Of a stretch of DNA of 64,000 bases, positions 11,278 through 63,039 are shown in pieces. The notes below the pieces were generated by a model, which saw only the letters and a program-made list of their open reading frames with translations, made no database searches and had not been told where the DNA came from. Each line of letters begins with the position of its first letter. Within the stretch, counting starts at the first letter, position 1. The stretch is from Fimbriosthenelais zetlandica. Its lineage: Eukaryota. The stretch is from the NCBI GenBank assembly GCA_977030845.1, contig OZ365114.1, forward strand, positions 14,818,001 to 14,882,000, written 5' to 3'. A program made the translations under genes and the position numbers.

Positions 11278-11309
11278 ATGGACGCTATGGAAGGAGAACA
11301 GCGACCCAG
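11278..11309 (+). CDS. ASTN-like exon 1 (MDAMEGEQRP + AG)
   Basis: ATG at 11278 and donor CAG|GTTAGT. The phase-2 end joins the G of exon 2 to give Arg, in frame with the next ATG. Translation could also start at 12370. Confidence 0.6.
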
Positions 11310-14300
11310 GTTAGTATGGACCGGGCCCCGATAAGCCTGGCTGCATTCACCATCAAAATATCCCCCATTGCTCTCTATACAAAGTGTTCACCCATTTCTC
11401 GCTAGGTGACGCCTGTACGCTCTCTTTCTCTGGTATATTGTTATGGTAAAAGCTCTGCATTCATGATGACAAATTTCTTTCCTTCAATCACTGATATTTA
11501 GTTTAATGTTGATCTGGGAAGGCTCTAGGCTTTGCTTTGTCTGTCAGCGAGGGTTGGGAGTGGGTGGTTGCCTGGTTTGAAGGGGTAAGATTCTGCTGAC
11601 AGTGGGATGAGGGGAGGGGAGGGATGCAGTGGATGGAGTCTGGGGCAAAACAACATGGAGGCAAGGCACTTCCTGTTGAGGGAGGGGATTTGGTAGATGA
11701 TCCCTAAAACACTGCTTATCCAGGATCAACTGGTATCTGTGTCATTCTGTGTCTATATTACACTATTGTATATGGTCTTAATAATGCAGTGAAAGATACA
11801 GAAGGGTAGGCCTAAATATGCAAGGGTCTTTAGGTGAACAGACTGCATCTGGCAGCATTATGCATTGACAGTGTGACAAGGGGTAGACAGCTGCCTCATC
11901 CCAGTATCCTATCTTATATTATGGTCCAAAAAGAAAGCCATATTTTTACCTCCCTGTTGTATTATAGGCCTAAACATAATTCAGGTAATGCTATTCAAAA
12001 TCTGATTGATTGATTATAATAGTAGACAAATTGGTACATTTTATGTCATTGTAGGCCTACTGGTAATGGTTTATGTGAAATGCTGTCAGAAATTTAAAAA
12101 ATGTGCCTTCAATCTTGTCAATCTCTGTCATCTAAATGGTATACACTATTGGATCGGGCAGGCCAATAGATATAAAACATGGGTGTGTATTGCAGTCTAT
12201 AGTACACATGGATGCGTATGGTAGGCTCTACCCATGGATGTGTATTGAAGGCTATACACATGGATGTGTATTGTGGATGTGTATTGGCCACTACCACCAC
12301 CACCCCTTGATTCCACCCCGCTAGCTTATGAATCTTTGCCTGAAACAAAGCCCCATTTCTCATTGCAGGATGTTTCGCCAGATAGTCCGCTTCGCCCTCG
12401 TGGGGATGCTGGCAGTGGTGGGATGCCATGCCGACCCTCAACCAGCTAATCAGGTGATCATATTCCGAGATTTACCCCTCAATGCCCAGCGCACGCCGGC
12501 ACACTTCATAATCAGGAGTACTTTCAAGGTAAGTAATTAACTTAGAACATTCACCCCCAGGCTAATCTAGATGGTGCGCTCCAGATAATGTATAATCATC
12601 TAGCGCTAAAGTTAAGTGATTACGCTTATCTTCCCCATCTCAGTCACCTCTCTTCCCCTCTATTAGATATAACAGGGGCTGTTAAGTACCTCTGGAATAT
12701 GGTTGTCCATTGGGCGATGATGAGGCAATTAAAAATGGTCAGTGTCAAAATGTCGTCGTCCTGCTTTGGTGTTTGGTTCCCTTAGGTTATAGAATTTAAG
12801 TTCCAGAGAATATTTTTAATTATTCATGGTATGAAGGGTATTCGTGATAAATATTTAAAAATTCGCCCGATATTCTCAATTGTTTCCTATTTCAAATACA
12901 TGTACATAGCATAGCTCAATACAATTTGTCAAGAGTATAGTTTGATTATATTCCCAGGTAAGTCTTGCTCTACTTGGTATTACTAACACTTTATTCCATA
13001 TCGTTATTGCATAACCCGACGCAGGTATATTTAAAATGAACAAAACAACAACACCAATTGTAAGCCATCTAGCTTCGACCAGACATTGTGTTCCCTGCTG
13101 ATCCCTATTGTTTCTCCAACGACCCTTCCCACCGGGCTTATTAAAACAATCATTGCCCACCAACATTATAACTGGTATACTAAATGAGTTGTATTACAGA
13201 AAGCTTATTACGCCTACATTGATCCAATAACCAGTATGTACATCCATTTCCCCATACAAAGGATTACTAATGAGTAAAGTATAGGTATTAGTATTGGTTA
13301 ATGCTTATGTGTACGCATAAGCATGCATTTACAAGCACCATGGTGGGATAATGCCTTGTTGTATAGCACTGTGTTTGGGGCTATGTAAACAGAGGTTGAA
13401 ATGTGGGAGGTTGGCAACTTGTATAGGAGCCGTTATTAAGATCAGTGCTACTGTGCCTTGACGTTTAAACCTGTGCATGTTTCTCTGCTCTGAACAACAG
13501 CTTGTATAATGAAATATCCACAGGTCGCCCCCGAATCTCAGAGGTCGATCTATTTACATTAAAAATACATGTACATGGGTAGATTACACTCACGACTCTG
13601 CCAATTGTTTACCAGTGGTTATATTTCTACAGACTGACTCGATACAGATTTAATTCAACCATAACTAAGCCCGGAGAGAGAGGGCTATAATATTGCAGTT
13701 GAAAGCTGTTTTCAGAGATAATGTTTACACTGAATGTCTGCAATTTTTTTGATATTTTTTTCCTCGAGAATTGTTGCATACAACTGTTTTGTTTAACTGG
13801 AGCCTTTGGTTTGATGAGGGCTGACACAGACAGAGAACAAGATCGTTCTGTTGAAAAGAACTAAATAATACACTTCTCTCACTGTTTCTCCATTGAAATC
13901 TATTTCTCCTTAATAATTATGAAAGCAGAAGTGGCAGGTGTCTAGTTAAAATGTGGAAACTTCTAAGATACATTTAATCTTTCTTTCAAAGTAATGGAGA
14001 GCCTATAAGTAATGTACTCACTAATAATTTTGCAGTCATTGAGACTAGGTAGTTTCAACACCTCTTTGAAATTCACAACATGGCTGGAGGCATGTTGCGG
14101 GTGTCCTTCCACTAATTATCAAGTCCATTTACCCGTACCAAGTGTGCATGAGCATGTAACTCCAGTATTGCGGAGGACTTTGACTCCCCAGAAAAATTTG
14201 TCAGATGCACGCGAAGTGTGTAACTGATCCACTGTAGGAACTGGGGTAGAATAGCAAGTTTACCAGTTCACCACGAATTAAATGCCTTGAAAGGAATGGC

Positions 14301-26300: not shown

Positions 26301-29300
26301 CATTGCAATACCACAAAATCACCCCTAGCCATGTAGGACTATTCTTTCTCTTGATTGGATTATCTGTATCCAACTTTTGTCCCTGCAAAAAGCTACCGTG
26401 TAAAGCTTCCAAAAAGGCAACTTCATTCCTATAATAAAATCATTTTTAAGGAATGTTTATTGGATTGCATGCCAAATCCAAGTTGACTTGTCTGGCCAGA
26501 TGCTCTTACGTTGATTGGATGATTCAATGAGGATTGGTGTAAATCATCTGTATTCAGCACTGAGAGTCCTCTCCATATCTGTATCAGATCAGTTGGGAAC
26601 TGGACTAAGCCACAGTGAATAGCTTTTCCTTCTTACCACTACCCCTTGGCACATAGTTTCTGCTGAAGATTTCATGCAATATTGTTTAGAAGAATTATGT
26701 GCAGTTCCTCTCAAGTCTTCTTCCCCCATCTGTTCAAACACGTGGCATTTATTCAAGGGAAAAGAAAATTTCAAAATAATATCCAGAGACAAGAACACTA
26801 CACATGCCTGCTCGTCCGTCCCTCTGGTTATCTTTGATCCTTGTCAATATTGATTTGCAGGTATTAAATTATCACCTTGCCTTTTCCCTCCGCCTATGAT
26901 GTTGACGCAAGGGGCCAGCGTTTATGGCGACTTGAATATCAATGGGCCTCCTTTATGGAAAAAAGCCCACTGGCTGACTGGATGACCAAATATTCCATAG
27001 CGTTGAACCACTTCAAACTCCGCATCTGTCAACCTCGAGTGGCGTATTCGTAATATTTCCCTTGGTTTTCTTTCTGAAATGAACACTTTTCAGACAGACC
27101 TACAACCTTCAGTGGTCGTATTTGAACCAGGGAGGACTTGAATAAGTTTGGGTTGTGCAAACACTCGCCATTTCCAAAGAGCAATGTTGTGAATATTTGG
27201 TCGACCGTGTTATGTGTGTTTGTGTTGTTTCTGGCAGGATTAAACTCTTTTCGACATGGCTGTTTTAAAACGAAGTAAACCACCAAATGTACTACGTAGG
27301 ATTTTTTTATAGGATGGAATCCCTCTGTTGGCCATATTACATACACAAAAATATAATAACCTCTGATAAATATAAATTCAAGTCAGTTAGGTTCAAGAAT
27401 ATGAGAAGTTGAAGGCTTACCAAAACTTAGCATGGTTTAGATTAGATGTTTCCTTATTGAAATCCATCCTAGTCAGTGACATATAGCCAGTTTTTTAGTA
27501 TTTGAGTATTAAAAACACATACAAATTAGTTGACATTGAGCTAAAACACACATTAAAATTAGTAAACATTGAGTTAAATTGGAATTGAGGGTTAAATTCC
27601 GAATTAGGTTTACATTGGGAGTCAGGGTCATTTTTGGCGTTAGGGTTGAATTGGACATGAGGGTTATATTGGATATGAGGGTTATATTGGATATGAGGGT
27701 TAAATTTGAAATGAGGGTTAAATTGGAAATGAGGGTTAAATTCGGAATCAGGGTTACATTGGGAGTTAGGGTTATTTTGGGAGTTAGGGTTACTTTGGGA
27801 GTTAGGGTTGAATTGGACATGAGGGTTAAATTGGAAATGAGAGCGTTCTGCCACTTGCCAAGCCGTTCCCTGACTTGAAAGTCTCATATAGAGTGTACAC
27901 AGAGCCTTCTGCCACTTGCCAGGCCGTTCTCTGACTTGAAAGTCTCATATAGAGTGTACACAGAGCGTTCTGCCACTTGCCAGGCCGTTCCCTGACTTGA
28001 AAGTCTCATATAGAGTGTACACAGAGCGTTCTGCCACTTGCCAGGCCGTTCCCTGACTTGAAAGTCTCATATAGAGTGTACACAGAGCGTTCTGCCACTT
28101 GCCAGGCCGTTCCCTGACTTGAAAGTCTCATATAGAGTGTACACAGAGCGTTCTGCCACTTGCCAGGCCGTTCCCTGACTTGAAAGTCTCATATAGAGTG
28201 TACACAGAGCGTTCTGCCACTTGCCAGGCCGTTCCCTGACTTAAAAGTCTCATATAGAGTGTACACAGAGCGTTCTGCCACTTGCCAGGCCGTTCCCTGA
28301 CTTGAAAGTCTCATATAGAGTGTACACAGAGCGTTCTGCCACTTGCCAGGCCGTTCCCTGACTTAAAAGTCTCATATAGAGTGTACACAGAGCGTTCTGC
28401 CACTTGCCAAGCCGTTCCCTGACTTAAAAGTCTCATATAGAGTGTACACAGAGCCTTCTGCCATTTTCTAGGCTGTTCACTGACTTGAAAGTGAAAGGTC
28501 AGTTTTTTTTTGAAAACCATTTAAAAATATATATACCAAATCGGCCCCAATCACTTTGAAACATTTTAAAACGATCGAAGTTTACAAAACTTCGGTCCCT
28601 ATATCAATCCTGAATTTTGATCATCAAAAACATAATGTTATCAAATTCTTCTGAATGTTGTGGATCCAACATCTGATTTTCACTGCAGGAACAACGAAAG
28701 AAATAAACAACGGCATACATTAACTCCGGAAAGTGAAATTTCCTGGCGTTTAAAACATTTTCCCCCAACATTAACTTTCAAGGTTAAGTTTCAATCTGAA
28801 CAAAATTCTTCGCCCATTAAGTTTTTCTCACCCTTTAATTTCCCCTCCAGGTTGAGGAAAATCTGTCTGCTTGCCGTGATTTGTTTGATGCATTCCGCCG
28901 TGACATTTTCCCTGGCTAAAACAATAAGGACGGGTTGCCATAGAAACTGATCCCTGGGGCTAGATTTACTAGGCGAGGTTTCCTGTCTGTTCGTCCTCTC
29001 TGGCATTGAGCATCGTTATAGATGTGTTCGTTTTGCAATTAGTGCCTCCTCTAAGTGCTGGGAAAACCTAGGGTATATCTTGGAGAACAAAACATCTTTA
29101 AATTAGGATACGTTTATGAAGTATTTTCTGTTGGAGCACGTCATGAATTTAAGGTGATCATGAAAATCGGTAACTTATTACGTTGAGCTTCTCCTCAATG
29201 AATAAACTGTAGGTAAAACATAATCTAAATTGCCCAAAACTATTGTACACTTTACATTTTGCACAAGGATTCTTAAAATCTTTTCAAATGTAGACAAAGG

Positions 29301-44990: not shown

Positions 44991-45043
<53 letters not shown>

Positions 45044-48000
45044 AACCCCCAAATCTGGGTCAGTCTCAGCGTTGGCATGTCCCTTGCGATATTGATCAGA
45101 ATTAACATGGCTTTCGGCTAAAGATTTCCTTCCAGTGACACCAGCCAAGACTCCGGTTGGTTCTGCTAAAGCGTCAAATTATCGACAGACATTGTGCCCT
45201 CAGGAGAGTATGGATTTTTGTTCAACTTCCAAACTGAAGACCTCTTCTGATTAATTGCGCCCAACACTTGAATCACTGGCACATTGTATGGAGAGAATTT
45301 CACGGATTCACTCCTCCTGTTGAAAAAGTCATGAAATAACTTGTGTTTGTATAATGATTGTTTGGAATGGATGTGCACTATCCGCCCACCAACTGCTTGA
45401 AAATAGAATCGGCTGCAGTCTTTGGGAGTTGTGAAAATGCTTTTGGATTTGTGTTGATTTTTAATTCAAAACCCCATTCAGCTGAGTTAATACAGTTTTA
45501 ATTTGTATCGGGGTAATGGAATCCGCAGATGGCGTAGGCTTTTCGTTGCTTATTTGTGATGCACCAATCATTTTTTAGCAAATCAATCACATTCAATTTT
45601 GGAAAATGAATGCTTAAAAATAGAATTAGCTGGGCAAATCGGCTCTTGCATCTAACACGCACAAAAATAGAAGTGTTGAAATATTTCTGAGTCAACCGAC
45701 TGCTTCTTAAACACTCTTAACGGAGATAATTTGGGCGGCCTTGAATTAGATATGATTACCAAGTGCAATCCAGATTAAGCATATTATGGTTACTTTCACA
45801 ATGCAACTCTATGACAGAGCCTTGGGCAGAGAGGATGCCAATTATAGTCCATACATTTACGCAGGCATCTGTTGATTTAGCCAAGTAGCATTAGCATCTG
45901 AAGCCATATTGATTATCCCTTGTTGGTTCCAAACAATCAACATGGGGTTTTCTTATAATACTCTACCGAGACAGTTCTGACTTGTAGCTAGGAGGCAAAT
46001 TAGGAATTAACAAAAGCAGGCACGATGGTTCTTCCCTCAGGCAAGACCCGCCTGGGTGAGTGCACACAGGGGCCGTTCAATATAAGTCAAAGCTTCTACT
46101 ATGCCGCTGTTCGTTGCCACTATCATTACATATAAATCATCTTGAAAGGAGGGAATAAACTGGTCCCGGGAAGCACTATAGGTCTGCATGCCTCCCTGAT
46201 GTTAGTATTGAAACTCACAGACTACTCTAAGCATTCTGATGAATGGCTCTTCCGGATGCCATCCTTTGGGAGCCTTGTCTGCGGGCTAAGCAACTCAGTG
46301 TCTCTGTATGAGTGGTCTAGGAACAGGCATTGTTTATCCCTAATGAACATCGGCATGAAACTCCCCTGGGAAAAATATACTTCCTACAAAAAATCTATCC
46401 ACTTACAAACACCTTGTATAGCAGAGACATTCCCCGAGGCCCAATGTCCACTAAACCGTTTTTTTCACTATAGAGCCAATCCTAATACAATGCTGTGACA
46501 CAGTGTTTTGCAGCAGTATCGTGTCGCAATAAAAAGTGATAACATAACTAATGGTAATACTTTTATTGTCTTCCCTAGAATCACTGTCTCAAAGTATCTA
46601 GTTGACTGCAGAGCCGTGACACCCACAACAGTGAGGTCTCCTCACTTTCACTTTTATTATTCCTAGCCTCTAGACTTCCTTGGTTCGCTTACGCCCATCT
46701 ATTGATGTAATATGCAATGGATTTCTGTTTATCATCCATCAACATGTTCAATATTCTGCGTACCATATTTTAGGAGCATGTTAATCCATTCCATAATCAG
46801 TGTTTGCAACCATTCCTATCGGGTAGACCATTCATACGCTTGGTTGGTGGCAAATCCCAATGCCATGCCAGAATAATCAGGTCAGGATGAGTCCTCCCAT
46901 CATCTCCCTTTTTTCATTCTCCTCGTGCACGTCCCTGCTTGTCTCCCTCTTTTTTTACTTTCTCCCTCAGCAGTCACCTATAACTTCATACTTCCCTGGT
47001 GATGAGGGAGGGCCGACAGATTCATGCTGATTTACACCAACATATAAGTTATATAGTCATCAAGAGTATGGCTGTTTGCACAGTCTGTAGGTCTGTTCAA
47101 CAGTACACCCATCAGGGAACATCCTGCTATGTGTTATCTCCTACTATAGTTGGGGTTTTTATCGCTCTTTCCCCAACATACCCAATAATTGCCACTAGTA
47201 TGCTAAAAAAATCTCCCCATCGCCTGCTATGACAGGCTCCTAGCTATAAATTATGCCATGAAAAGGGTGTGTGCTCAAGTATGTCCAGAGATTTTTCTAA
47301 CTCTTGTTTTTTTTCACTTTTGCAGGGCTCAGTTGAATTCATTGAGTCGGAGAATTTCCACATTGAAGTAGACATAACGGCCCCATCCGTTGATGAACTA
47401 GCACTTGTTCAACACAATTACACGGACTACAAAGGATCTGTTCTTTTACAAATGGTATGTATTCATCATGTTTTTAACGCAATAATTAACCATTAAACCT
47501 ACTTCGATGGTACGGAATAGATTGTGATGTCTAAAAAGGCAGATTCTTCATTTGTTAAAAAAAATGGTAGCTTTTTTGAGTTAGTATTGTTTGAAAAAAT
47601 ATCCTACTCATTTGAATTCCTTTTCATCTACGCCTCATCTTGCATTAAATCAATTGTATTCCTAATTGCAGTGTTCAAAATGCAAATGCAAAATATGTCA
47701 ATGTTTTCTTAATTTGCCTATGCAAATTCTCCATACTTAGATGGAATCAATAATGCCAGCCTCAGCTTTGATTCACCATGCAAATTGGTTCATTTCTTTA
47801 TACTACTTGGCTAGGCCATGTTTTTGTTCCACATTTTACTGCACTACTTGAAAGACGAAGAAGGTTGCACAATACAAAAGCCCACATTGCTACATGGACT
47901 TTAGGAAGGAACCTGGAACATCCATTATAGTTAGACTAAAAATTTCTACTGAGCAACGAAGATATTTAATGATATATACGCCTCATGATACTCTATACAT

Positions 48001-51000: not shown

Positions 51001-54000
51001 TGGCATTATGAGCACGGCAGTGATAAACCAGCAAGCACCCGGTGTTATGAATTCCGCCATCTTGTGCTGCGGAAGTGAGGGATACATGGGGCTCGTGGGT
51101 AATAGGACGCCATATTTAGAACCCACCAAAGGTGGATAATGGCCCAAGACAGTAAAGCAGGCAGAGACAGTAAATGGACAGGAGCCCAGAGTCATGTCAG
51201 ATTTTACTACCGGCCCGAGAGTGGCCATGGTAAGAGGTTTAGTAAGGTTTGGTCCAAGCCTCAAGATTCAGGCACCTTTGGATCTAGATCATGAATTCTA
51301 GCACCATTGTACCACTTCTGTAGGCCAACACTGCCTTCAGTTACATTGCCTTCTTATTTTTCAAAATAGATCTAAAAAATCGGCTTTGAAATTATGCGTC
51401 TCGGTGTCAAGTGAAGTGAATGCGTGGGTAATGTGGATTTCTGCATGGTGGATTTGTCATGTAGGTTAGCAACACTGCCTGTGTCATTTTGTGACACATG
51501 GATGTTGTGGTTGAGAAGGAGACCTCAACGTGTGTATCCCACACACAGATATCCATCAATATCCACCTGGCGATATGTCACCTTGCACTATATGATGTGA
51601 ATAAGTGACTAGCCTTTGGCGTGCTGTTTGGTATGAAACATGTTGATTTTTTATTCTGCGTCTGGGATCCTTGCTAGCAGGAAGGCAAGGACAAGTTCCT
51701 TTGAAGCCTAACACTTGGATATTGAGGTTCAGGCAGGGCTATTGTAGCTGCCACCTTGAGGAGTTTGTATATACAGCCTCGTGTGAACAGGTCTATATAT
51801 AATATTGTAATTATGAACCTGGATGCTCTGCATTACAGGACCAAAAAATTAACTGTACTAATCTTGTGCTTCATTCTTTCTTTCGTTTAGTGTGGTCACT
51901 GGTTTGTTCATTGACCAGTTTGTTCTTTCATTCGTGCAAGCTTTTAGTTCAGAGAAAATGGATTGTTCCGTTGTATATCTTTTCTCATCTACCTTGAGTT
52001 TGAAGTGATGGGTTTACGAGCTATATTCTAGATTTACTGTCCCTCAAAACGCCCGCAGTAACTCGGAACTTCTCACCTCATTTTTATATTCATAATATAT
52101 TCATTTATGGCCTGCAGATGGTGTACATCAAATGTGCTGCGTAATTAGAGGATCTGCATAATATTATAGGGGTATGGAATACTGAGTCTATAGAAAGCAA
52201 ACCAAGCCAATCTTGAAGGCTGTAAGAGGTGGATGTCTTCAAGGCTTCCAGAATCTTCAAAATGTGGAAAGAAGCGCTTAAGTGAACCATAGATATTCCA
52301 AAAAAGTGATTTTATTTCGCGACGACGCAAGTTGATTCCCAAAGCGTTCTCCAACTTTGTTATTGCCCTGACCTTCACGCAGTTGGCAGGGTTCATAATT
52401 TCTGGAATTCCAGTCTCCCCTAACACTTAAAATTAGGTTACACAACAATAGTTATGTATCCAGGAAGGAGCTGGAACAGTTCGTTGTAACAAACGTGTTT
52501 GTGCCTATAACTACATGAACATTATTAGCGAGTGTCACTTACATGTAAATGAGACTGCATGATGACGACTGTCACTGTTGACAGCAATGTCACTGGGCCT
52601 GCCCTCTCGACCTGACCTCAGCCCTGAGGTGACACCAAGCTGACATTTAATGTTGACCCCTGTCCTGACCCGTCCAGGTTAATGACCGCTGTCGCAATAT
52701 TTCCCTTCAACAGCATATAAATAATGTGTGCACGTGCTCTCTGTATGACTGAGGTGACTCACAAATATTCGTTATATGGCAACCTCCCCTTCGGCTAAAC
52801 TGTCGACATAATCCTGTCAAGGTTGTGCAAACTTTCCAAGCTCAGGAAGGTTTTTGGAGTATAGATCATCGCTCTGCTGTCAGGATCAATTGGATGTCCC
52901 AACAGGAATTATAAAGTTAGGCAAGAATTGCGATAATTAATGCACTCGGAGGCTATGAAAGTGTGTGCTGGTAATTGTAATCTGTAATGTGCAAAGTTGT
53001 GGTTATATCCCGTGTAACTCATTAAGGTCCTTCTCCGGGTTCACCACCATGGAAGGTTTGACCAATTTGTTCTTGTTATGTTAATTATAGATATGTCTTA
53101 AACTTGTTACGTTATTGTCTTCTTGTTATGTTAAGTTGATTACAAAGTTTGTGTCGAGGAGGCATGGGGATTTTCAGGCAAATGCCTCAAACCGGAAGTT
53201 CCCAGATGCTGAGGCCAGGGCACATCCTAGAATTCCTTATTCCCATGTCTGTTCAGGATAAGCTAGTTGTTACATTTTCAGTTTTGCTGTCATCTTTGCT
53301 GTTTGTCATTGCTTTACTAAGCTTTATACTTATGGGTTTTATCTTCTCTTGCCAGTTTGAGAGCTTACCAGTGGTTCCGGCTTCACCCATCAAGTTCATT
53401 CTGCTGGCAGTAGGTGGCGGCACTGTGCTCATCTTCCTGCTGACGTTAGTGATTGTATCTTGGTGGAATGCGTACAAGAGACCACTTCTGAAAGACACTA
53501 AAATCTTCAACCCTGGTAAGACAACTCCTTTCTCTCGACATCAAACTGTTTACTGCATTGCATCAGAATGTTACATATACCATTTTGTACCAAACAAATA
53601 CACGTTTAGCATTGAAAGTATTGACAACAATTTTGGTAGGTTTCGTAATGTAAATATTTTATATTTTTGACCACACACAAAAATGTTGAATAACATATAA
53701 TTACGACAGAGTAAAGACAATAATTTATACTTTATGTCACAGTGAGACTGGAAGTCCTTGAGATTCATGCAAGATTTAAACCTGAAAGAATAGAATTTTA
53801 AAAAATCCATCACTGGCAAAGTAATAATTAAGAGCATCTCATGAGCCATGCATTACATTGTGCAGGTTGGGTGGAGCACTGTATCCATGGGCAAGTTTCA
53901 ATGAGTGAAAGCCAGGAAGTGCTGGCGAAAAAGGTATCATAGCTAGCTGAGCATCATTAATGGTGATTCATAGAGATCAATAGTATCACGCCTCGTCACG

Positions 54001-57000
54001 CTGGCTACTTGATGATACTACACCTACAGCCCTTCAAGGCACTTGTGTTGATTTAATGCCACATTTATCTCACACCATCAAAGTGATGGAATGGCAGAAA
54101 AGGAGAGAAAACCACTTGCAAGGCCCTAATACCATCCTCCGATTATTTCTTTTTTAGCAGGCTTCCAATGATTTGGAAATACTTTTTTTCCGAATGTGTT
54201 TAGATAGGGGCTCATGTAATATTCATGTATCTATATTTGCCTTAATATAAGGTATCCATCAGCAGTTTCTTGTGGGTTGACTGAATGTAATAGAGATGTA
54301 TAGTGAATGAACTGCGAACTATATGTACGAATGCCCAAGGCTCAATTAACCAAGAAACTCGCTGTTTGCATGCAGTCAAAGGACTTGGGTCAGAAAGAGG
54401 AAAATAGACTTGTGGAGGGGGTCGGCTGTCTATCTTGTGGAATATTCGTGATGTCTGACTGCATAATTTGGCAGAATTACCGGGGCGCCGGGACTGGGGA
54501 ATCCAATATTGCCCGTTCCTGCCATCGTATTACCCGCCCGCTACGAGATTAGCTTGAAAAGCGCGCACATCCTGCTCAGTCTTTATAATGACTACTTTTC
54601 CCCCATGCTCATCCACGGTGATTAGATTTCCACGTGTTTAATGGTATGCTTTTCATTACATTCTGTATCCATGGTAACCGAATATCATCGCCGCTTTTGT
54701 ATGTGTATATATGTACCCTTGGCATCAGTCAAACAAATCTGTCACTTTGAGAGGCGTGAAGGCTACCTAATCATCACCGTGGCTTTATGGAAGGCAATAG
54801 CCACCTTCGATAGTGTACCCTTGAGTCCTGAGTTAAGTTTTAATTAATGTTTGAAGTGGTCGGAGTGAATAGTAATAAGCAGCAAATGAAGAGGCTTGCC
54901 GGGTGGAATTGCTTCTTGCAGACCCAGCTGATTGTATGGTAAATTTGATATCATGTCCACTTACAGTATTGGATTCTCGGGCCAGGGTGCTTTCAAGCAG
55001 CTAAATTGTCTGCCCGCGCATCCATACAAAAATGGCCATCCTCAGAATAGATAGAGCGAGACATATTCTGATATTGCAGTTCGTTACTGGCTTCTTGGTA
55101 TTATATTCAATAAGGAATGGGAAACGTTCCTTGGTCGGAAATGGCTCTCTGGAAAGATTGTCTCAGATTATTGTAATTTTTTTTCCAGGGAATGAAAAAG
55201 ACATATTATATAGAAAAATATGTATCATTAGAATTATTTTCCAGTTTGGCCTTTTTTATAGGCACCATACACATTTTTACAACATATTATATCCAATCAA
55301 TTATTACAGAAGGAACACGCCTGCCTTTTCTCCAACAATTTTCTTTCAATACAAAAACATTTTAGTCACAAAAATAGATTTTTCACATGATAAATAGAGG
55401 TGGGGATAATAAAGTGACATTATTTACAGGCTTTCTAGGAGCTCCGGTGGCCAACAGTACAGATAATGAGCTATGTAAGTGTGGACAAGCTGGCCTTACT
55501 ATCTACAGGTCATTGTGCAACCATAGACTAAAGTATTGTTGTACAATGCCCTGTTACTCCATCAGTTGACGGGAACTGTGCTCAGCAGTTAACGTCAACT
55601 GATCCAGGTGGCAGCACTCTACAGTCACTCACTGATTGAGCAACTCGTGCACGCACACAGTCATATATTCCTCTCTATGTACTGCTTCTATTTGTTGTTT
55701 CATTTGAAAACGGCTTACATTCTGAACCCTGGGAAATCGATATATCTCTTTGTCTTCTGTAAAATTCATTCTTGTATACTTTTAATCTACAGAAAAACTT
55801 ATTTTCGTGTTCTATTGGGAAAAGTTTTTTTTTGAGACGGTCAATTGCAGTTCCCATCCAAAACTATCCTCATCAATACTCCAACTTTAAATTTTCATTT
55901 TGGGAAGGTTTCATTATCATTATGCAGTATTTCAAGTATGATTTGAAACAGTTCTTTTCTCAAAAATGCATAATATTCGGAAGAAAAAAATAATCATGAC
56001 CAAATGAAATATGATCCTGCATACTTCTTTGTTCACTTATGTTGCTTTAAGAGTAGATATCTGGTATACACACTCGCGTACACATCTATTGCACACATGC
56101 CAAATCACTAAGTCAAAACACAGGATCCGTATTGTTTCTACTGTATCCACCACCCCAAAACATTGTTTTTATTCAGTTTCTCTTTGTTGGTCAATTATTG
56201 CTCATTTTGATTCTTTTTTGCTAAAAGGTATTTTGCTTTTATACCGTGGACATATCAATATTAATTTCAGGCCTCGACACTTGTCATTATATTTATTGAC
56301 TCCATTGCATTTATCCTATACTCCTATGCTTACTCCTTTTTCTATGAATTTATGCAAGAAATCTGCATTTGCCAACAGCAATGTCCAGATTGAATTATGA
56401 ACATGGAAAGTTCAATATCCATTACATAAAGATATAATTTGAATATTCTTCATTCGATAGGAAATTGTAATTTTTAGATTTCATCTCTTGCACTCAATAT
56501 GGTCAGCCATAATTGAATCTGGAATATAATTCGAAAAGATCTGTCTACAATGACTTAAATGACATTTTCTACTTCACATAATTAGTTATCAAGTCAGAAA
56601 TTACTTCTTCGGAGACATGCTCTGATGTGGGAAGGAGCTCAAGTGGTTGCTATTGTCTTTTGGTAATGTCTATTTAATCACATAAATTGACACGAAGTCC
56701 ATTTTTATGTTTTCTTCAGACTCCTCACAAGCTCCCCTTTTGGATGAGAAGATTGGAGAAGGCGACAAGGGACAAAATGTAGGCATCCACCATTGTTCTC
56801 TTTCCTCCAATAATTCCCATTATTTCATCTTAACTGCACCTGGACAAAGCCAGCATAATAAAATAAAACAGACGCAACCAAATAATACTGTGCATATTTT
56901 ATGCCCTTTCAGATCTCCATTTCTCAAGTGATTGAATTTATTTAATTTGTCTGCATTTATTGTCTGGACTGATGTAAAAAAGATTCTTTCATACAACGTC

Positions 57001-60000
57001 AATTTTATTTTATATATGTTCATTTCCTAAAAATCTAGTATTTTAAGCCGTATTCTTGAGAAAGGAGAAAACTGACTCCTAAAACTTCTGGCTGTATTGG
57101 TTGTATTACTGACTTTCAATTCAAGACGGAATTATATTTATATTTTGGAGATGGCGTCGCGTAAAATCACCAATCATTCTATATTTTTCTTGCTACATTT
57201 TTTTTCAAGGGCGGGCATAAACTCAAGAAGCGAAAGAAGAAAAAGACGGCAGCCCGGTCCTCACAGGACGACTATGTGTCCAGTGAGGAAGACACTCTGG
57301 ACCGCCGATCAGACGCTGCCTCGCCCAACCGCAAACAGTACGTCCAGGGGCGCAGTCCCCAGAAGGACATCCCTGCTGAATCTGACCTTGTCGCGAGCTC
57401 ACGTCATGCACATTCGAGTGGGATGACCTTGACTGGAGTCAGGCCAGAGGGGATGACTGAACTCCCCGACCCGTCCACTCTTCCACCTCCACCACCGGAG
57501 CTCACAGGAGATAAGCCAGTTGTATCTTACATCAAGATGACCGGAGAACCGGCCCAGACGGATGCAAAATACAAACGGAAGAGTGCAGGAGGCCAGTACA
57601 TCCAGCTCAGCCAGTCCGAAGGATCTGGCAGCGACATCGAGAAACACAGCCAAGCGACGCTGAAGATACGTCGTGATGAATCAACAGAAGGCGCACCTCA
57701 CATGCCAGATGTGGTTAAGAGTCGAAACAGGAACCCGGAATACCCACCACCACCGTACATGCATAAGAATGGAGGCCGATACATACCTCTGAACAACTCT
57801 GAAGTTGACTCGAGTGACGGAGAGTACAACAGCAAGCTGTCAGCTCACCACATCGCGCAGATCCTGGGTGACAGTAGCACACGTGGCTCCCCCAAGTACA
57901 GCCACAGTAACACTGACAGACCCCCCATCACCTTTGGACCTCCGCAGCAGCGGCAGAGCGAACTGGACCAGCTTGAACTTGACAGCGTTGGAAGCTCTAG
58001 ATCTGGTGGTAGCTCCAAGTCATCTAGCGGCTTCAAGACGCAGACCGCCTCGTTCACTGACAGCATGAGAAGTGACAGCGAACGTCGTAACATTTCCGAT
58101 TCTGACTCGGCCAAATCAAGTACTTCCTCCAGTACTTTCCCAAGGTCACAGAATAAAGATCCGACGTACGGGTCCAAGTATTTTATGACACTTGGTGGAG
58201 GGAGACAAAACGGTCACACTTCACCGGCCACGGACTCTGAAGGCAGCAGCCCGCGACTAGTGGACGAGGCATACGGTACTATGGGATCTAACGGAACCAG
58301 CACCCTGAGAGGAAGGTAGGTCCAATCCTATATTCATAACTTAATGATTATATTTGAGAAAGCTAATATTTTGAAAGTTGTTATCAAAGAATTATATATA
58401 TGGAGAGGAATTTTGAAAAGAAATGTTGCTACACATTGTCGAAAGAATCAATCAGCTTCTGTTCCGTTTTGGGGCCTTCTCTCTATTCACTTGCTTCCAA
58501 AATTCACATAACTCAAGTTTATTAATCATGATTGAATTTTGGTAAATTGTCACTATTCCGATATTCATTGAGAGCATGTTCCGATGTCATCTATAATCAT
58601 TTGCACTTGCGGTTTGAACAGAATAAGCATGTGTACCAAACTTTACAATCTTAATTTATTAATGTTTTCAAGGGGTGCCCATAAGTAAGTGCATCTATCG
58701 TGACTGCGCCCATCAGTGTTGTTATTGAGTTATAGAAAGATTTGTCTGCCACGGATTAGACTAAATATTTCATCCTGTATCCACAAGTTCTTATACCATA
58801 TGACAATAATTATACTCATCTTTCCCTGTCAGTTTCCAAAACTCATTGTCTCATGCTCGACCCACACTTTTAATTAAATCACCTTTATATGTAACCTCTG
58901 TGTACAAATTCTATGCCATTGTTTGCTATGCATACCCTTTATACTAATTATCTTTGTCTCATGGCACCCAATTTTTATCTTCCATTTGTTCTCCATGGAT
59001 GTCATACTTTATCTCCCATTATATATCTATCGTCTCAGATATTGATTCTATACCCCATTAATAATATGATTGTGTAATAACCTCATGTTTACATTAATGT
59101 ACCAACCTTCTATATTTATAAACACCTCAGTTTCAAGTCGTACACCACAAATTATCCATTGCGTTCATCTGCTTGTCGCTTGTTTTTCCACCCATATGTT
59201 GTCCTGTTCAATTTTAACTACCCTAGTTTTCTTTTTTCTGTTCAATTTTTTCTTCACAGTGAGTACTTTCCTTTCCATAGTACTGCATCTACTGGAAGTG
59301 GTAGTAGCAGCAGCGTTGTAACCGTTATAGCAGCAGATGACCCCAACAACACGTTTGGCCGCCGACGTGTTCAGAGGCCACCAGATGGCATGGTGGAGGG
59401 TGAGAACACTACCGGAACAGGAACCTTCAAGAATCGATCCACGACTGGCCCCAACAGTGGCGGCAGTGGCAACACAGGTGGTGCTGGTGGAGGCGGCGGC
59501 GGTGGTGGTTTCCCTGCTGGCCAAAAATAGTGAGTTTTAAATAGAAATATGACTCGACAGATTTATTTTTGACGACAGTGTCAAGCATCTGGGATGGATG
59601 TTGTATGTTCTAACAGGTTATGTTTCCGGCACTCCAGTTGTGAAATGTGATACAACTTTCAAGAAACATGTATATACCCTAATGTCCGTTGTTCTGAATT
59701 CGTCCGACCCAAGGGTTTAGGCGTAGAAATACCCTAGCGAGCGTACACAACCATGAATCTTTGGATTTATTTCTTATCTGCCATAAAAACTTGTTTCAAT
59801 GTCGTTTATTTTTCCCCACCCAATTTAATCGTCAACTAGGGCGTTCCATGGAGAGCGAGACTACCTATATCAACTTCATTTTCCATGGGTGGTGGAGAAT
59901 GGAACCCTAGTGTTATTTGAAGTTGAAGGCAATATCAGATAAGAAATAAAGAAGGGATTCCCATATCTGTACATAAAATTCCATGGTAGTTTCCCACCCA

Positions 60001-63000
60001 GTAACCCATTGACCCATTTCTGTGATTTGAATAAAAAACATTCCACTATAGGGCCTATTACTTCCGTTTACAGAGGTCTTTGAGGTGGTCTGGGAGGTTA
60101 TTTTGAAATAGGCCTGCACCATCAAGGCTATCTCACAATGTTGGTCTGCATGGTAAACTGATCAGGTATAGCTGAAGCCAGTCAGGAATGGCCGGCCACT
60201 GTACCTCACTTCATAACCCAGACCCCCTACTGGCTTGCAATGCTGGTCAGGCTTTCTCGCTGTCCACCAGGGGGCCAGAGCGAGCTCCAATCAATGATAG
60301 CGCCTTGCCCCCGGCATTAGAATAGTCTCATCGGAGTCGTTTTTTAAGGTTCTTAAGGCATGTGGACAGAAGGTGGCATTATGGAGCCTGATTGGAGGTA
60401 ATGATAATGGATACGGCTACATAAGCCAGCGCCCGTACCAATCTTAGCGGACCCACTTTATCGCTGGTCGTAATGGATGCCATAGGCAGCACAAGAGGGT
60501 GCCACTGGGCCGGGTTGACATTTCCACCTCATCTTTCAATAAAAACACCTCCTCTACCAGCACAATAGATATTCCCTCCTTTAGGTATTTTCCATGTTCA
60601 TATGATATACGGCCTGGCTCCATAGTGCTTCCGCATTTACGCCCCCATGTTTTATATACATAACCACTATTTATAGATCTATATAGATGCAGCGGTGGGG
60701 CCGGGGCATTAATGTAGGCGCGCGTTATAACCGTGTACTAACTAACACTACATTAAGTATGGCCCGGCAAGAATTTACGCAGACATATCGGGCTGATTTG
60801 AATTGCAAATTGTTATGGAGAAGGTAAAACAGAGTGCCTTTGGTAGAGTGCTGAATGATCCCGGCCAGCTTTGAGGCTAGGCGTTACTCATTAGACAAAA
60901 CGCGGGCTGACGTTAATAGTTGGCGTTGACGTTCTTTGTTCCTTCCCCCTGTCGCATTAATCTTATTAACAGCAAGGCAAAGCCAGATTTGTTAGTGGAC
61001 TGTAGTGGCTACTTCTAATTGAAGAAGTTTAATTGAAGGCTGGCTCACAACCTATTAAGGATTATCCCTTAATGCAAAGTCGATATAGATCACTTTGGTC
61101 CGCAGATTTTATGGTTGAATGGCTATGATTACTTAAGATATCGGAGGGGTGATCCTTTTGTTCTGATGATGCGGCTCAACCATGGAAAGCTGTCTTTCAT
61201 AGCTGGGTACTCTCTCCATGCATTATGCAAATCCCCTCGTAAATCTCCCATAAAAACCAACAATATCGCATATTAGCTTTTAAAATGTCAGATGGGTGCC
61301 ACACAACGCAACACAATCAGATCATATTGCCATGATATCAGCTTCCGAATTAAATTCAGTTTTATCAATTACAATGTACTGTATATTGTAGATACAATGG
61401 TAAACTGCTTAATTTATCGTTGTATGCAGGATTTTGTAATTGCTTATACATGTATGAGTAGCGTGTATGTTCTAATCCCCTGCAAGAATACAGATTACAG
61501 GATGTAGCGGATAAGATACTGAACATTGTCCTTGAAAGAACTTAGCTCGCATGTTAAATCTAGCTGGAAAATTCATGCTTACTTAGATATAAGATGAAAT
61601 TATATTGCTATTGCTACGAAATGTGCAATGAAATTTCCAATAAGAAAGGGTCTCGCATTCGCTATTCGGTTGTATGTACTTACTCATCTGAGCTAATGCA
61701 TCTGCATCCTTGTAATATCCTGTTGTAATTAACTTATTCCATTGAACCTCGAGCTTGACCTTGTAAGCTTATATTGTAGATTACTTGCCCGTCATTGTTT
61801 GATTATGAAATTCATCTAATTGCTAATCTTTTCGTCGCTCTCTCCAGCCTCCACATGACGATGTTGACTGTACTGGGTATCATCAGCCTCATGACAGGAG
61901 TCTATGGGGCTCTAATGACCGAAACTGAAGTACACCTCAAGATTTACGCTCCCTCTGGCTTCATTAGGAACGGCTCAGAAGTCTATTATAACAAAGGAAA
62001 AGTCGTCTCTGTCAACGCTTCTCACATGAAGTACCAGCTGAACGTGGTCGAATTTGGTGAGTAATTGTTCTGATGAGATATTGGCCATCTCCACCAAGAA
62101 AAGACTTTTCCAATTTTAGGGAAAATACCGTTATTGTCTGGCGGGAAAAGTAGTCGAAAAGTATACCAAAAGTGGAAAGGTTTCTATACTTTCAGACGGA
62201 ATTATATAGCCTGCTAATTTGGTTGGGAGATCCAACACATTTTGCGGGCCAACCGTTTGTTTTATGCACTTTTCGAAAACACAGCATCGCCATCGACAAG
62301 AAAGTAGCCCAAAGGAATTAAAGATTTATTCCAAATATATCAATCTATTCCCCATCACATTGCATTGGTAATGATTCTTTTACATTTCTACTTGTCTATT
62401 TTAGGTGTTGGAAATGCCCAGATCCTCAACCCCGGCTTCAACAAGTGCACAATGACCAGTTGCGCCCAGGGCTGCGACCCCAACACTGGCACGTGCATTT
62501 GTCACCGAGGCTACCGCGTCTCTGACGGCTTTCACTGTGAAGGTGAGATGCCTGCACATAAAGATCCCTTATATACCTTTAAACAATAGTGACTCCCTCC
62601 TTGAAAGATCGCTTTGATGCTTTCCAGAATGCCCTATTCAAAAAAACGACTCAAGATTCCAACATGGCGAAATGTTTCTCTCAAAAGATGAAGGCGCTTT
62701 TATATCTAACATTATGTCTTTTAGTTCAGGATGCTGAACAAAGGTTATGCATGTTTTCCTGAGATGTTGAGCTATTTCCAAGGCAATTTATAGTATACAT
62801 TGTAATATTGTTTTTAAGGAATAGAACATAACATTTCCTTCTCAAAAGCAATTCTAAGTTGACATAGAATTTGGAATTTCTGACACGTGCATGGTCTCTC
62901 TTTCGTATCGAAACAGACGTGGACGAATGTACTGAGGCTGAATCTATCTGCGATCTCAATGCTCAATGCTTCAACACTATCGGCTCGTATAAATGCATTT

Positions 63001-63039
63001 GCGCTGAAGGTTTCTACGGCAATGGAACAATCTGCGAGG
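11278..63039 (+). CDS. ASTN: Astrotactin-like two-TM membrane protein, 10 exons in window, 3'-incomplete: join(11278..11309,12369..12528,47326..47454,53356..53515,56720..56778,57210..58315,59281..59529,61848..62056,62405..62542,62917..63039)
   Basis: All introns are GT-AG and the phases chain 2,0,0,1,0,2,2,1,1 into a stop-free frame of ~788 aa. Architecture is SP, small ectodomain, TM1, long S/P/G-rich loop, TM2, EGF. Segments resemble vertebrate ASTN1 as recalled: HFIIRSTFKGSVEFIE vs LFSVRNDFPGEMVVVD; LHMTMLTVLGIISLMTGVYG..EVHLKIYAP vs TLTLISITSCVIGLVC..VVKITLHVP; CAQGCDPNTGTCICHRGY vs CEHQCDPETGECLCYEGY. The family assignment is inference, since the MACPF domain is not in the window. Confidence 0.8.
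12180..12290 (+). repeat. Degenerate short tandem repeat (CATGGATGTGTATTG-like) in intron 1
   Basis: Several TGGATGTGTATTG or TACACATGGATG copies. Confidence 0.65.
12369..12528 (+). CDS. ASTN-like exon 2: signal peptide MFRQIVRFALVGMLAVVGCHA plus start of ectodomain
   Basis: Acceptor TTTCTCATTGCAG| and donor AAG|GTAAGT. Classic n/h/c signal peptide with C-H-A at the predicted cleavage site. Confidence 0.88.
21668..22255 (+). repeat. 41/42-bp direct repeat pair (21668..21709 and 22215..22255) flanking ~505 bp
   Basis: GAAATCATAGTTCAAAAAGATGTTTT(T)CATCATTTTGATGTT occurs twice, differing by one T. Confidence 0.9.
27571..27840 (+). repeat. Degenerate 18-bp tandem array, ~15 copies, consensus AGGGTTAAATTGGAAATG / AGGGTTACTTTGGGAGTT, telomere-repeat-like
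   Basis: Units counted directly. Most unit junctions form TTAGGG, TGAGGG or TCAGGG. Confidence 0.92.
27840..28491 (+). repeat. 61-bp minisatellite, 10 full copies plus one diverged partial copy
   Basis: Unit AGAGCGTTCTGCCACTTGCCAGGCCGTTCCCTGACTTGAAAGTCTCATATAGAGTGTACAC starts at 27840, 27901, 27962 ... 28450. Full copies differ by 0-2 substitutions from the consensus. Confidence 0.97.
29719..29858. promoter_or_regulatory. Intronic promoter-like island with opposed YY1-type and ETS-type motifs
   Basis: CGGCCATTTT (29719..29728), ACTTCCGGT (29792..29800), CAAAATGGCGGC (29825..29836), ACCGGAAG (29851..29858). Confidence 0.4.
34579..34820 (+). repeat. Degenerate local triplication (GCTGGAAAGCAATGTTACCCTCGTGCAACT-like unit)
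   Basis: Related copies near 34579, 34640 and 34728, with two related TAGTGTG..CACG..CAGCTTG segments. Confidence 0.6.
44967..45039 (+). repeat. (CT)n microsatellite
   Basis: About 70 nt of CT repeat, with a pure run of more than 20 units. Confidence 0.97.
47326..47454 (+). CDS. ASTN-like exon 3 (GSVEFIESE...SVLLQM), N-terminal ectodomain
   Basis: Long polypyrimidine acceptor TTTTGCAG|, donor ATG|GTATGT, 129 nt, phase 0-0. Confidence 0.85.
53356..53515 (+). CDS. ASTN-like exon 4 with TM1 (FILLAVGGGTVLIFLLTLVIVSWW)
   Basis: Acceptor CTCTTGCCAG| and donor CTG|GTAAGA. A 24-aa hydrophobic helix is followed by basic residues (YKRPLLK). Confidence 0.9.
56720..56778 (+). CDS. ASTN-like exon 5 (DSSQAPLLDEKIGEGDKGQN)
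   Basis: Acceptor TTTCTTCAG| and donor AAT|GTAGGC. Phase 1->0 exactly bridges exons 4 and 6. Confidence 0.82.
57210..58315 (+). CDS. ASTN-like exon 6: large Ser/Pro/Asp-rich cytosolic loop
   Basis: 1106-nt GC-rich open frame (extends the 57276..58319 ORF upstream), acceptor TTTTTCAAG|, donor AAG|GTAGGT. Confidence 0.93.
59281..59529 (+). CDS. ASTN-like exon 7: Ser/Gly-rich end of cytosolic loop
   Basis: Acceptor CTTTCCATAG| and donor TA|GTGAGT. Phase 2-2 fits both neighbours (AG+T = Ser; TA+C = Tyr). Confidence 0.88.
60264..60275 (+). promoter_or_regulatory. CTCF core motif CCACCAGGGGGC
   Basis: Exact match to the CTCF core consensus. Binding not demonstrated. Confidence 0.4.
61848..62056 (+). 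CDS. ASTN-like exon 8: second hydrophobic segment (TM2/internal signal) plus start of C-terminal ectodomain
   Basis: Acceptor CTCTCTCCAG| and donor TTG|GTGAGT. Encodes LHMTMLTVLGIISLMTGVYGA followed by a beta-rich segment with NGS and NAS sequons. Confidence 0.88.
62405..62542 (+). CDS. ASTN-like exon 9: EGF-like module (CTMTSCAQGCDPNTGTCICHRGYRVSDGFHCE)
   Basis: Acceptor CTATTTTAG|, donor AAG|GTGAGA, phase 1-1, six Cys. Confidence 0.92.
62917..63039 (+). CDS. ASTN-like exon 10: calcium-binding EGF domain
   Basis: DVDEC...C..[27 protein letters not shown] matches the cbEGF consensus. Acceptor AAACAG|, donor AGG|GTAAGT, phase 1-1. Confidence 0.93.

What the first reader, a model, noticed from the sequence alone, without database searches (positions are those of the whole stretch)
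11278..63039. Astrotactin-like gene in an apparently invertebrate genome
Seen: a 10-exon, phase-consistent ORF with SP, small ectodomain, TM1, long cytosolic loop, TM2 and EGF. Established: this unusual topology is that of astrotactins (ASTN1/2), MACPF-containing neuronal migration proteins usually described as vertebrate-specific. Inference: three separate segments resemble ASTN1 as recalled, so this may be a divergent pre-vertebrate astrotactin.
Basis: partly seen in the sequence, partly recalled or inferred. Interest (0 to 1): 0.85.

Follow-up and report, generated by a model that had tools for sequence, protein, structure and literature searches.

The report
Two-pass EGF membrane gene, astrotactin-like topology
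The gene is real and conserved in several related invertebrates (probably annelid worms), and its protein is predicted to cross the membrane twice as vertebrate astrotactins do, but no test I could run showed that it is related to them.

Summary
The ten exons join into 2,365 nt, which is 788 codons with no stop. Nine of the ten recur in the same order in loci from at least four other species. Against the closest relative pN is 0.088 and pS is 0.757 over 705 codons.

The critical joint, cytosolic tail to second hydrophobic segment, is well supported without RNA. All 7 loci end the tail exon in TA|GTGAGT or TA|GTAAGT. All 6 loci that hold the next exon start it after ag|C or ag|T. The split codon is therefore Tyr everywhere. 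Two species have no Met before the hydrophobic segment. It is one gene, not two.

The astrotactin reading is not supported as homology:
- Pfam ASTN_1_2_N hits none of 28 exon translations.
- A published ASTN-2 stretch after TM2 aligns at chance level.
- The EGF is a generic thrombomodulin-type EGF.
- No MACPF, FN3 or annexin-like exon turned up in 58 kb downstream or in the genome.

Exon 10 has a conserved donor, so the gene goes on, but I could not find its 3' part. No RNA run was listed. Best reading: a lineage-restricted precursor that works like an astrotactin in topology. Amphioxus astrotactin genes are already annotated, so "vertebrate-specific" is dated.

The parts
11278..11309 (+). Putative exon 1 (MDAMEGEQRPR; donor gttagt). 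In phase with exon 2 but unverified.
   Evidence: Read from the sequence. No other species' locus reached this far upstream.
12369..12528 (+). Exon 2: signal peptide (MFRQIVRFALVGMLAVVGCHA) and the start of the N-terminal ectodomain.
   Evidence: Matches L014 at 43% aa identity. Hydropathy peak at aa 12-30. The L014 copy also has a Met right after an acceptor and a GCHG|D site.
47326..47454 (+). Exon 3: the best conserved ectodomain exon (GSVEFIESENFHIEVDITAPS...NYT...GSVLLQM), with a conserved N-glycosylation sequon.
   Evidence: 72% aa identity to distant L014 and 77-84% to relative L017. Single copy in the genome.
53356..53515 (+). Exon 4: end of the ectodomain, TM1 (IKFILLAVGGGTVLIFLLTLVIVSWW) and the basic stop-transfer flank (YKRPLLKDTK).
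   Evidence: Hydropathy up to 2.68. Conserved in L014 and L016.
55430..55474 (+). It may be constitutive or a cassette.
   Evidence: The relative has the same cag| acceptor and |gtaagt donor, and similarity stops at the donor.
56720..56778 (+). Exon 5: DSSQAPLLDEKIGEGDKGQN, start of the cytosolic loop.
   Evidence: 95% aa identity to the relative. DSSQAPLLD is also present in L013 and L015.
57210..58315 (+). Exon 6: 369 codons of S/G/T/P-rich cytosolic loop. It holds a KKRKKKK cluster, three Y-x-x-hydrophobic motifs, one PPPPY and many conserved short motifs.
   Evidence: phmmer found 14 unnamed ORF fragments and nothing longer than 417 aa. Alignment A4. 92% aa identity and pN 0.048 against saturated pS.
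59281..59529 (+). Exon 7: end of the loop (STASTGSGSSSSVVTVIAADD ... poly-Gly). It ends in TA|GTGAGT, so the unspliced reading gives TAG.
   Evidence: The donor is identical in 7 loci while the upstream codons differ. This exon is fused to exon 6 in L013.
61848..62056 (+). Exon 8: Tyr-Leu-His, the signal-peptide-like TM2 (MTMLTVLGIISLMTGVYG|A) and a 49-aa lumenal stretch with an N-A-S sequon.
   Evidence: ag|Y acceptor after a pyrimidine tract in 6 loci. No Met before the hydrophobic segment in L014 and L015. Single copy.
62405..62542 (+). Exon 9: six-Cys EGF of the thrombomodulin-EGF5 type (C.Q.CDP.TG.C.C..GY).
   Evidence: PDB best hit is thrombomodulin EGF5, E 2.2e-5. Pfam EGF_Tme5 was hit by 5 of the 28 translations scanned, which included the five exon-9 ORFs; the tool does not say which members hit.
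62917..63039 (+). Exon 10: calcium-binding-type EGF (DVDEC...). It ends in a phase-1 donor G|GTAAGT, so the reading frame goes on.
   Evidence: Conserved in 4 other species with a donor at the same phase. The L013 gene call carries PF07645 EGF_CA.

Best explanation
This is one real, single-copy, lineage-restricted gene; other notes of this scan call the genome annelid, which I did not test. It encodes a precursor that crosses the membrane twice. Inferred route: an N-terminal signal peptide takes an ~85-aa glycosylated ectodomain into the ER lumen. TM1 stops transfer. About 490 aa of disordered but strongly conserved loop stay in the cytosol; the loop carries an acidic Ser cluster, three Yxx-hydrophobic motifs, one PPxY and many other short motifs, which suggests sorting or adaptor binding. 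A short, weakly hydrophobic second segment then restarts translocation like an internal signal peptide. It puts a small beta-rich stretch, a thrombomodulin-type EGF, a calcium-binding EGF and a still unknown C-terminal part outside the cell. The small residues at -3 and -1 (V-Y-G|A; V-M-A|Q and V-Y-A|Q in other species) make signal-peptidase cleavage after TM2 likely. That cleavage would give a type I membrane protein plus an EGF-bearing fragment from one reading frame. The protein works like an astrotactin in topology, but relatedness to astrotactins is not shown. Shown: exon structure, conservation, selection, hydrophobic segments, EGF modules. Inferred: orientation, cleavage, motif function.
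For: Exons join without a stop. Nine exons plus a tenth small one are conserved in order in L012-L018, from at least 4 other species. pN is 0.088 and pS 0.757 over 705 codons. The exon 7 donor TA|GTGAGT is the same in 7 loci and the exon 8 acceptor ag|Y in 6 loci, so the split codon is always Tyr. L014 and L015 lack any Met before TM2. In L013 the intron is only about 130 nt. Hydropathy peaks lie only at the SP, TM1 and TM2. Basic residues follow TM1, and NYT and N-x-S/T sequons sit on the predicted lumenal sides. The gene is single copy. No named relative was found: 14 ORF fragments among 1.8 billion representatives, unnamed. The astrotactin tests were negative.
Against: No RNA evidence: no sequencing run was listed. 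The 3' part of the gene is missing. No conserved exon was found in about 23 kb after exon 10 in the relative, nor in the 2.7-12 kb available in three other species, compared with 100 kb of this genome. The C-terminal architecture is therefore unknown. TM and cleavage calls rest on hydropathy and the (-3,-1) rule, not on a trained predictor. The profile tests were run exon by exon, which is insensitive, so a remote astrotactin relationship could be missed.
Confidence: 0.6

Rival explanations
1. It is a true, very divergent astrotactin orthologue. The MACPF, FN3 and annexin-like exons would lie beyond the 100 kb I could read, past a TNFR-like gene nested in a giant intron, or would be too diverged for exon-wise detection.
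For: The rare topology is the same, including a signal-peptide-like TM2. The first EGF after TM2 shares the C.Q.CDP.TG.C.C..GY pattern with ASTN-2 EGF-like 1; human ASTN-2 scores a raw 68 against exon 9. Exon 10 has a conserved donor, so more exons exist. Introns here reach 35 kb. From memory only: vertebrate ASTN2 is very long and hosts a nested gene, and three short loop motifs look collinear with ASTN1. Those recollections are leads, not tests.
Against: ASTN_1_2_N gave no hit on 28 exon translations from 6 loci, even at E up to 10. The ASTN-2 stretch after TM2 aligns at chance: 92 to 1,924 of 2,000 shuffles did as well, and the weak match is not shared between species. The EGF is about as close to thrombomodulin EGF5. 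A calcium-binding EGF follows directly, unlike the ASTN-2 alignment. No Cys is available for the tether. There was no MACPF, fn3 or Annexin_2 signal in 58 kb or genome-wide, and the ASTN-2 MACPF core found nothing. Pappalysin, the conserved astrotactin neighbour in chordates, was not found.
Confidence: 0.17
2. These are two neighbouring genes wrongly joined. One would be a type I membrane protein ending at the TAG after exon 7. The other would be a secreted EGF protein whose signal peptide is the so-called TM2.
For: An in-frame TAG sits exactly at the end of exon 7 in every species, and ORF-type gene calls in the databases all stop there. In the window, in L013 and in L016/L017 the hydrophobic segment starts with Met and looks like a classical signal peptide. 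Intron retention could produce the short protein as an isoform.
Against: The TAG is forced by TA plus the G of a consensus GTGAGT/GTAAGT donor that is conserved in 7 loci while the neighbouring codons vary. Exon 8 has a pyrimidine tract and an ag|Y acceptor in the matching phase in 6 of 6 loci. L014 and L015 have no Met in that ORF. The gap is only about 130 nt in L013. Order and strand are kept in all species.
Confidence: 0.08
3. The short form is the main product and the EGF-bearing long form is a minor isoform, or the reverse. Regulated use of the exon 7 donor would choose between a single-pass and a two-pass protein.
For: Any transcript that keeps intron 7 stops at once at the TAG in all species, with no extra residues. 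The loop (92% identical) is more constrained than exon 8 (65%).
Against: The TAG follows automatically from a split Tyr codon and needs no separate selection. No transcript data are available.
Confidence: 0.1

Closest known systems
Astrotactins ASTN1/ASTN2 (chordates)
   Same: Both have an N-terminal signal peptide, a small lumenal N-domain, TM1, a cytosolic loop of some hundreds of residues, and a second hydrophobic segment that behaves like an internal signal peptide. In astrotactins that segment is cleaved by signal peptidase (10.1101/493858). An EGF module follows soon after it.
   Different: There is no match to Pfam ASTN_1_2_N. The sequence after TM2 aligns at chance level. The second module is a calcium-binding EGF. 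No Cys is available for the disulfide tether. No MACPF, FN3 or annexin-like domain was found. The loop is longer (about 490 aa) and unrelated by phmmer.
Thrombomodulin-type EGF modules (Pfam EGF_Tme5, cEGF) followed by calcium-binding EGF
   Same: Exon 9 matches thrombomodulin EGF5 (PDB 1adx, E 2.2e-5), and five of the 28 translations scanned, which included the five exon-9 ORFs, hit EGF_Tme5. Exon 10 has the D-x-D-E-C calcium-binding signature.
   Different: Thrombomodulin-group proteins are single-pass, with the EGFs before the TM. Here the EGFs come after a second membrane segment.
Polyproteins matured by signal peptidase at internal signal sequences (for example alphavirus and flavivirus structural polyproteins)
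   Same: An internal hydrophobic segment with small -3/-1 residues would restart translocation and be cut. One reading frame would then give a membrane protein and a lumenal protein.
   Different: This is a cellular, intron-bearing animal gene. Cleavage is predicted, not shown.

Membership tests
Astrotactin (ASTN1/2) | Topology: SP, small N-ectodomain, TM1, cytosolic loop, TM2, large C-terminal ectodomain | tested here: met
   Hydropathy peaks lie only at aa 12-30, 111-148 and 632-656. A basic flank follows TM1, and sequons sit on the predicted lumenal sides. This is prediction only. The size of the C-terminal ectodomain is unknown.
Astrotactin (ASTN1/2) | TM2 acts as an internal signal peptide cleaved by signal peptidase | tested here: inconclusive
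   The hydrophobic core is short and weak. V-Y-G|A, V-M-A|Q and V-Y-A|Q fit the (-3,-1) rule in 4 of 5 lineages. No trained predictor was available and no experiment was done.
Astrotactin (ASTN1/2) | Match to Pfam ASTN_1_2_N (PF19441, 555 positions) | tested here: not met
   There was no hit on 5 window exons at E up to 1, none on 28 exon translations of 6 loci at E up to 10, and 0 candidates genome-wide. The tests were exon-wise; the joined protein could not be submitted.
Astrotactin (ASTN1/2) | MACPF domain in the C-terminal ectodomain | tested here: inconclusive
   300 + strand ORFs of 42 aa or more over 58 kb downstream gave no MACPF hit. Matches to the MACPF signature pattern fell only in AT-rich non-coding sequence. 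The only MACPF hit in the genome is on another contig. The ASTN-2 MACPF core found nothing. The 3' exons of the gene were not located.
Astrotactin (ASTN1/2) | ASTN-type FN3 (PF19743) and annexin-like domain (PF18411) | tested here: inconclusive
   There were 0 candidates in the whole genome for both families. No positive control was possible.
Astrotactin (ASTN1/2) | Cys in the N-ectodomain that tethers the two cleavage fragments by a disulfide | tested here: not met
   The mature N-ectodomain (exons 2-4) has no Cys in the window, in L014 or in L016/L017. The only Cys lies in the c-region of the signal peptide.
Astrotactin (ASTN1/2) | Sequence similarity to ASTN-2 just after TM2 and in EGF-like 1 | tested here: not met
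   The post-TM2 32-mer from Suppl. Fig. 5 of PMC4892435 did not rank exon 8 among the top 8 of 5,691 ORFs, and shuffles did as well in all species. EGF-like 1 is similar (raw score 45-68) but no closer than thrombomodulin EGF5.
EGF / calcium-binding EGF modules | Six-Cys EGF pattern, and the D-x-D-E-C signature for cbEGF | tested here: met

The most novel reading that the evidence does not exclude
The gene is a protostome descendant of the astrotactin ancestor. If so, the astrotactin N-terminal module (two TMs, cytosolic loop, internally cleaved signal, first EGF) would predate chordates. It might even predate the joining of that module to a MACPF-FN3-annexin ectodomain.
Probability: 0.15. Interest if true: 0.8.

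Novelty: new variant of a known kind. Interest (0 to 1): 0.45.

Why it matters
Cellular proteins made by signal-peptidase cleavage at an internal signal are rare, and astrotactins are the textbook case. A second animal family with the same layout, independent or very distant, would show whether the layout is convergent or ancient. It would also offer a simpler system for asking what the layout is for, namely co-producing a membrane protein and an EGF-bearing partner from one frame. The family has no named relative among 1.8 billion representative proteins. Its "disordered" loop is its best conserved part (92% identity where synonymous sites are saturated), which points to dense, unknown cytosolic interactions. 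The case also shows how ORF-type gene calls cut such genes at a stop codon created by a splice donor.

Tried and rejected
- RNA evidence: two look-ups listed no sequencing run.
- Astrotactin Pfam families, MACPF and pappalysin (Peptidase_M43, the conserved astrotactin neighbour) in the whole genome: nothing near this locus. The tool warns that empty answers prove little.
- Pfam scan of 300 downstream + strand ORFs: only weak chance-level hits.
- Walking downstream in other species by exact-protein look-ups, to about 23 kb in the close relative and about 12 kb in L014: no conserved exon by tblastn, blastn or three-species consistency. One weak 29-nt match at about 75.25 kb lies in AT-rich non-coding sequence.
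- ESM Atlas look-ups of exon 8 and exon 6 gave no lead.
- Word-index protein searches with exon 8 and exon 3 found only 1 and 2 short unnamed ORFs.
- Complex prediction, N-ectodomain pieces against the post-TM2 stretch: no verdict (score 0.26, mark 0.34). This is evidence neither for nor against binding.
- I considered the Cys-rich exons at +36.7, +82.7 and +98 kb as the continuation of the gene and rejected this. The first starts with accATGG plus a signal peptide, and it cannot be entered in phase 1 without a stop.
- The joined 788-aa protein was not sent to any profile, fold or database search.
- Literature searches found no paper on a protostome astrotactin.
Full report
**Setting.** The window is G000:C21:14818001-14882000 of a 447-Mb, 79-contig eukaryotic assembly with about 41% G+C. 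Several earlier notes of this scan call the genome annelid. I did not test that myself. No astrotactin-specific Pfam family rings anywhere in the genome, which would be odd for a vertebrate.

**The observation.** I rebuilt the model from the sequence. Ten + strand exons (coordinates under parts) have AG acceptors and GT donors. They join into 2,365 nt, which is 788 codons with no stop and ends open in phase 1.
- Hydropathy windows above 1.5 occur only at aa 12-30 (signal peptide MFRQIVRFALVGMLAVVGCHA), aa 111-148 (TM1) and aa 632-656 (TM2).
- The roughly 490 aa between the TMs are rich in S, G, T and P.
- Exon 9 is a six-Cys EGF and exon 10 a DVDEC-type EGF.

**Is it a gene?** phmmer of the large exon against 1.84 billion representatives gave 14 hits. 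All are unnamed, 64-417 aa long, and are ORF-type calls. Fetching their contigs gave loci from at least four other species:
- L012, an NCBI draft genome;
- L013, a Logan contig;
- L014 and L015, ENA assemblies;
- L016-L018, a closer relative whose introns no longer align.

Exons 2 to 10 recur there in the same order and strand. Against the relative, 705 aligned codons give pN 0.088 and pS 0.757. The cytosolic loop exon is the most constrained at 92% aa identity; exon 8 stands at 65%. The gene is single copy.

A further 45-nt exon at 55430-55474 keeps the frame. It has the same acceptor and donor in the relative, and similarity ends at the donor. Exon 1 lies beyond all fetched flanks and stays unverified.

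Every database ORF ends a few residues after the poly-Gly stretch, at an in-frame TAG. TM2 in the window starts with Met and looks like an ordinary signal peptide. The nucleotides settle the matter.
- All 7 loci end the tail exon with TA|GTGAGT (TA|GTAAGT in L012), while the codons before it differ (QK, PK, HH, HQ). The TAG is therefore TA plus the G of a consensus donor.
- All 6 loci that hold exon 8 have a pyrimidine tract and ag|C or ag|T. The split codon is TAC or TAT, Tyr, everywhere, followed by Leu-His or Leu-Gln.
- In L014 (…LHATVLCC…) and L015 (…LQTSVICT…) there is no Met before the hydrophobic segment, so it cannot start a separate protein.
- In L013 the intron is only about 130 nt.

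I take the junction as well supported, though no RNA could be examined because no run was listed. A transcript that keeps intron 7 would stop at once and give a single-pass protein. That remains a possible isoform.

**How it probably works (inferred).**
- The signal peptide and the conserved NYT sequon place the ~85-aa N-domain in the lumen.
- TM1 is followed by YKRPLLKDTK and KLKKRKKKK, so the loop is cytosolic.
- Alignment A4 shows conserved short motifs in the loop: Y-x-SSEDD, EKPVVSYIKM, GGQYIQL, SEGSGSD-EK, TLKIRRD, MPDVVK, RYVPL, SD-EY-T-NKLSGAHIAQIL, TDRPPTTF, ELDSVGSSRSG, RLVDEAYGTMGSNG and STASTGSGSSGSVVTVIAADD.
- Three of these motifs fit Yxx-hydrophobic sorting signals, and the window has one PPPPY. 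These are leads for trafficking or adaptor binding.
- TM2 has a short, weakly hydrophobic core and small residues at -3 and -1 (VYG|A, VMA|Q, VYA|Q). That is the signature of a cleavable signal.
- Cleavage would release or expose the EGF-bearing part. Published work shows exactly this maturation for mouse Astn1/2 (10.1101/493858).

**Is it an astrotactin?** The topology agrees with the literature (PMC4892435). Every homology test I could run was negative.
- Pfam ASTN_1_2_N hit none of 5 window exons, and none of 28 exon translations from six loci at E up to 10.
- Five of the 28 translations scanned, which included the five exon-9 ORFs, hit EGF_Tme5 instead. PDB puts thrombomodulin EGF5 first (E 2.2e-5).
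- The supplement of PMC4892435 prints a machine-read ASTN-2 alignment from TM2 onward. Its 32 residues after TM2 did not rank exon 8 among the top 8 of 5,691 ORFs of the 164-kb region. Shuffled versions scored as well in 92 to 1,924 of 2,000 trials, and the weak match is not shared between species.
- ASTN-2 EGF-like 1 does resemble exon 9 (C.Q.CDP.TG.C.C..GY, raw score 45-68). It is no closer than thrombomodulin is.
- In ASTN-2 a long non-EGF stretch follows EGF-like 1. Here a calcium-binding EGF follows directly.
- The mature N-domain has no Cys for the astrotactin disulfide tether.

**Downstream.** Exon 10 ends in a phase-1 donor that is conserved in five species, so the gene continues. I read 100 kb further.
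- 300 + strand ORFs of 42 aa or more over 58 kb gave no MACPF, FN3 or annexin hit.
- Matches to the MACPF signature pattern fell only in AT-rich non-coding sequence.
- The ASTN-2 MACPF core found nothing in the genome.
- No conserved exon appeared when about 23 kb of the relative, and 2.7-12 kb of three other species, were compared with this region.
- At +36.7 kb a different gene starts: accATGG, a signal peptide and TNFR-like Cys-rich modules, which cannot be entered in phase from exon 10.

The missing 3' exons are therefore either few, short or poorly conserved within 63-100 kb, or they lie beyond a nested gene. More sequence could not be fetched.

**Verdict.** Because the tests were exon-wise and the 3' end is missing, I keep about 0.15-0.2 for a true remote astrotactin. 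Astrotactin-named genes are already annotated in amphioxus (PMC11401434), so only a protostome member would be new. I found no paper on one. The family itself is unnamed and very thinly sampled.

Noticed in passing
L005:5711-5910 (G000:C21:14917711-14917910, +); also L010:2747-2836 and L011:7988-8062: A separate + strand gene starts 36.7 kb after exon 10. It has a perfect Kozak accATGG, a signal peptide (MEFPWKQQNSGGFFHALLLVSLLVCVL) and a TNFR-like Cys-rich module ending C-K-G|gtaag. Two more modules with the same phase-1 donor lie 47 and 62 kb further on. Weakly similar modules occur elsewhere on C21, on both strands.
   Followed up: partly
window 59527-59535 and the matching sites in L012-L017: The stop codon that ends every database ORF of this family is TA plus the G of a conserved GTGAGT donor. 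ORF-type gene calls therefore truncate the protein at 632 aa. Intron retention would give exactly that single-pass form.
   Followed up: partly
window 57210-58315 versus 61848-62056: The compositionally disordered cytosolic loop is more conserved than the lumenal exon after TM2: 92% against 65% aa identity, pN 0.048 against 0.192. This is unusual for low-complexity sequence.
   Followed up: partly
window 27573-27841 and 27840-28492: Two adjoining minisatellites lie in the 35-kb intron 2: an 18-bp unit with 14.9 copies (79% matches) and a 61-bp unit with 10.7 copies (97% matches).
   Followed up: no
window ~44900-45100: A (GA/CT)n microsatellite shows up as SLSLSL/RERERE reading frames on both strands.
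   Followed up: no
L003:88-614 (G000:C21:14892088-14892614): A tandem repeat is open in all three + frames, with repeated ...PLCHQTVYGSLLTVLLGPFMSSNRVWVPAHCAFGPLYVIKPCMGPCSLCFWA... units. It lies in the region after exon 10 and had no Pfam hit.
   Followed up: no
L014:16700-21044 and L019:3036-8459: In the L014 species the intron after exon 10 is filled with reverse-transcriptase (RVT_1, endonuclease-like) elements with long open frames of 666 and 944 aa.
   Followed up: no
L013:3748-4953: In this species exons 6 and 7 are one exon (intron lost or never gained) and the exon 7-8 intron is only about 130 nt. Its genome is much more compact at this locus.
   Followed up: no
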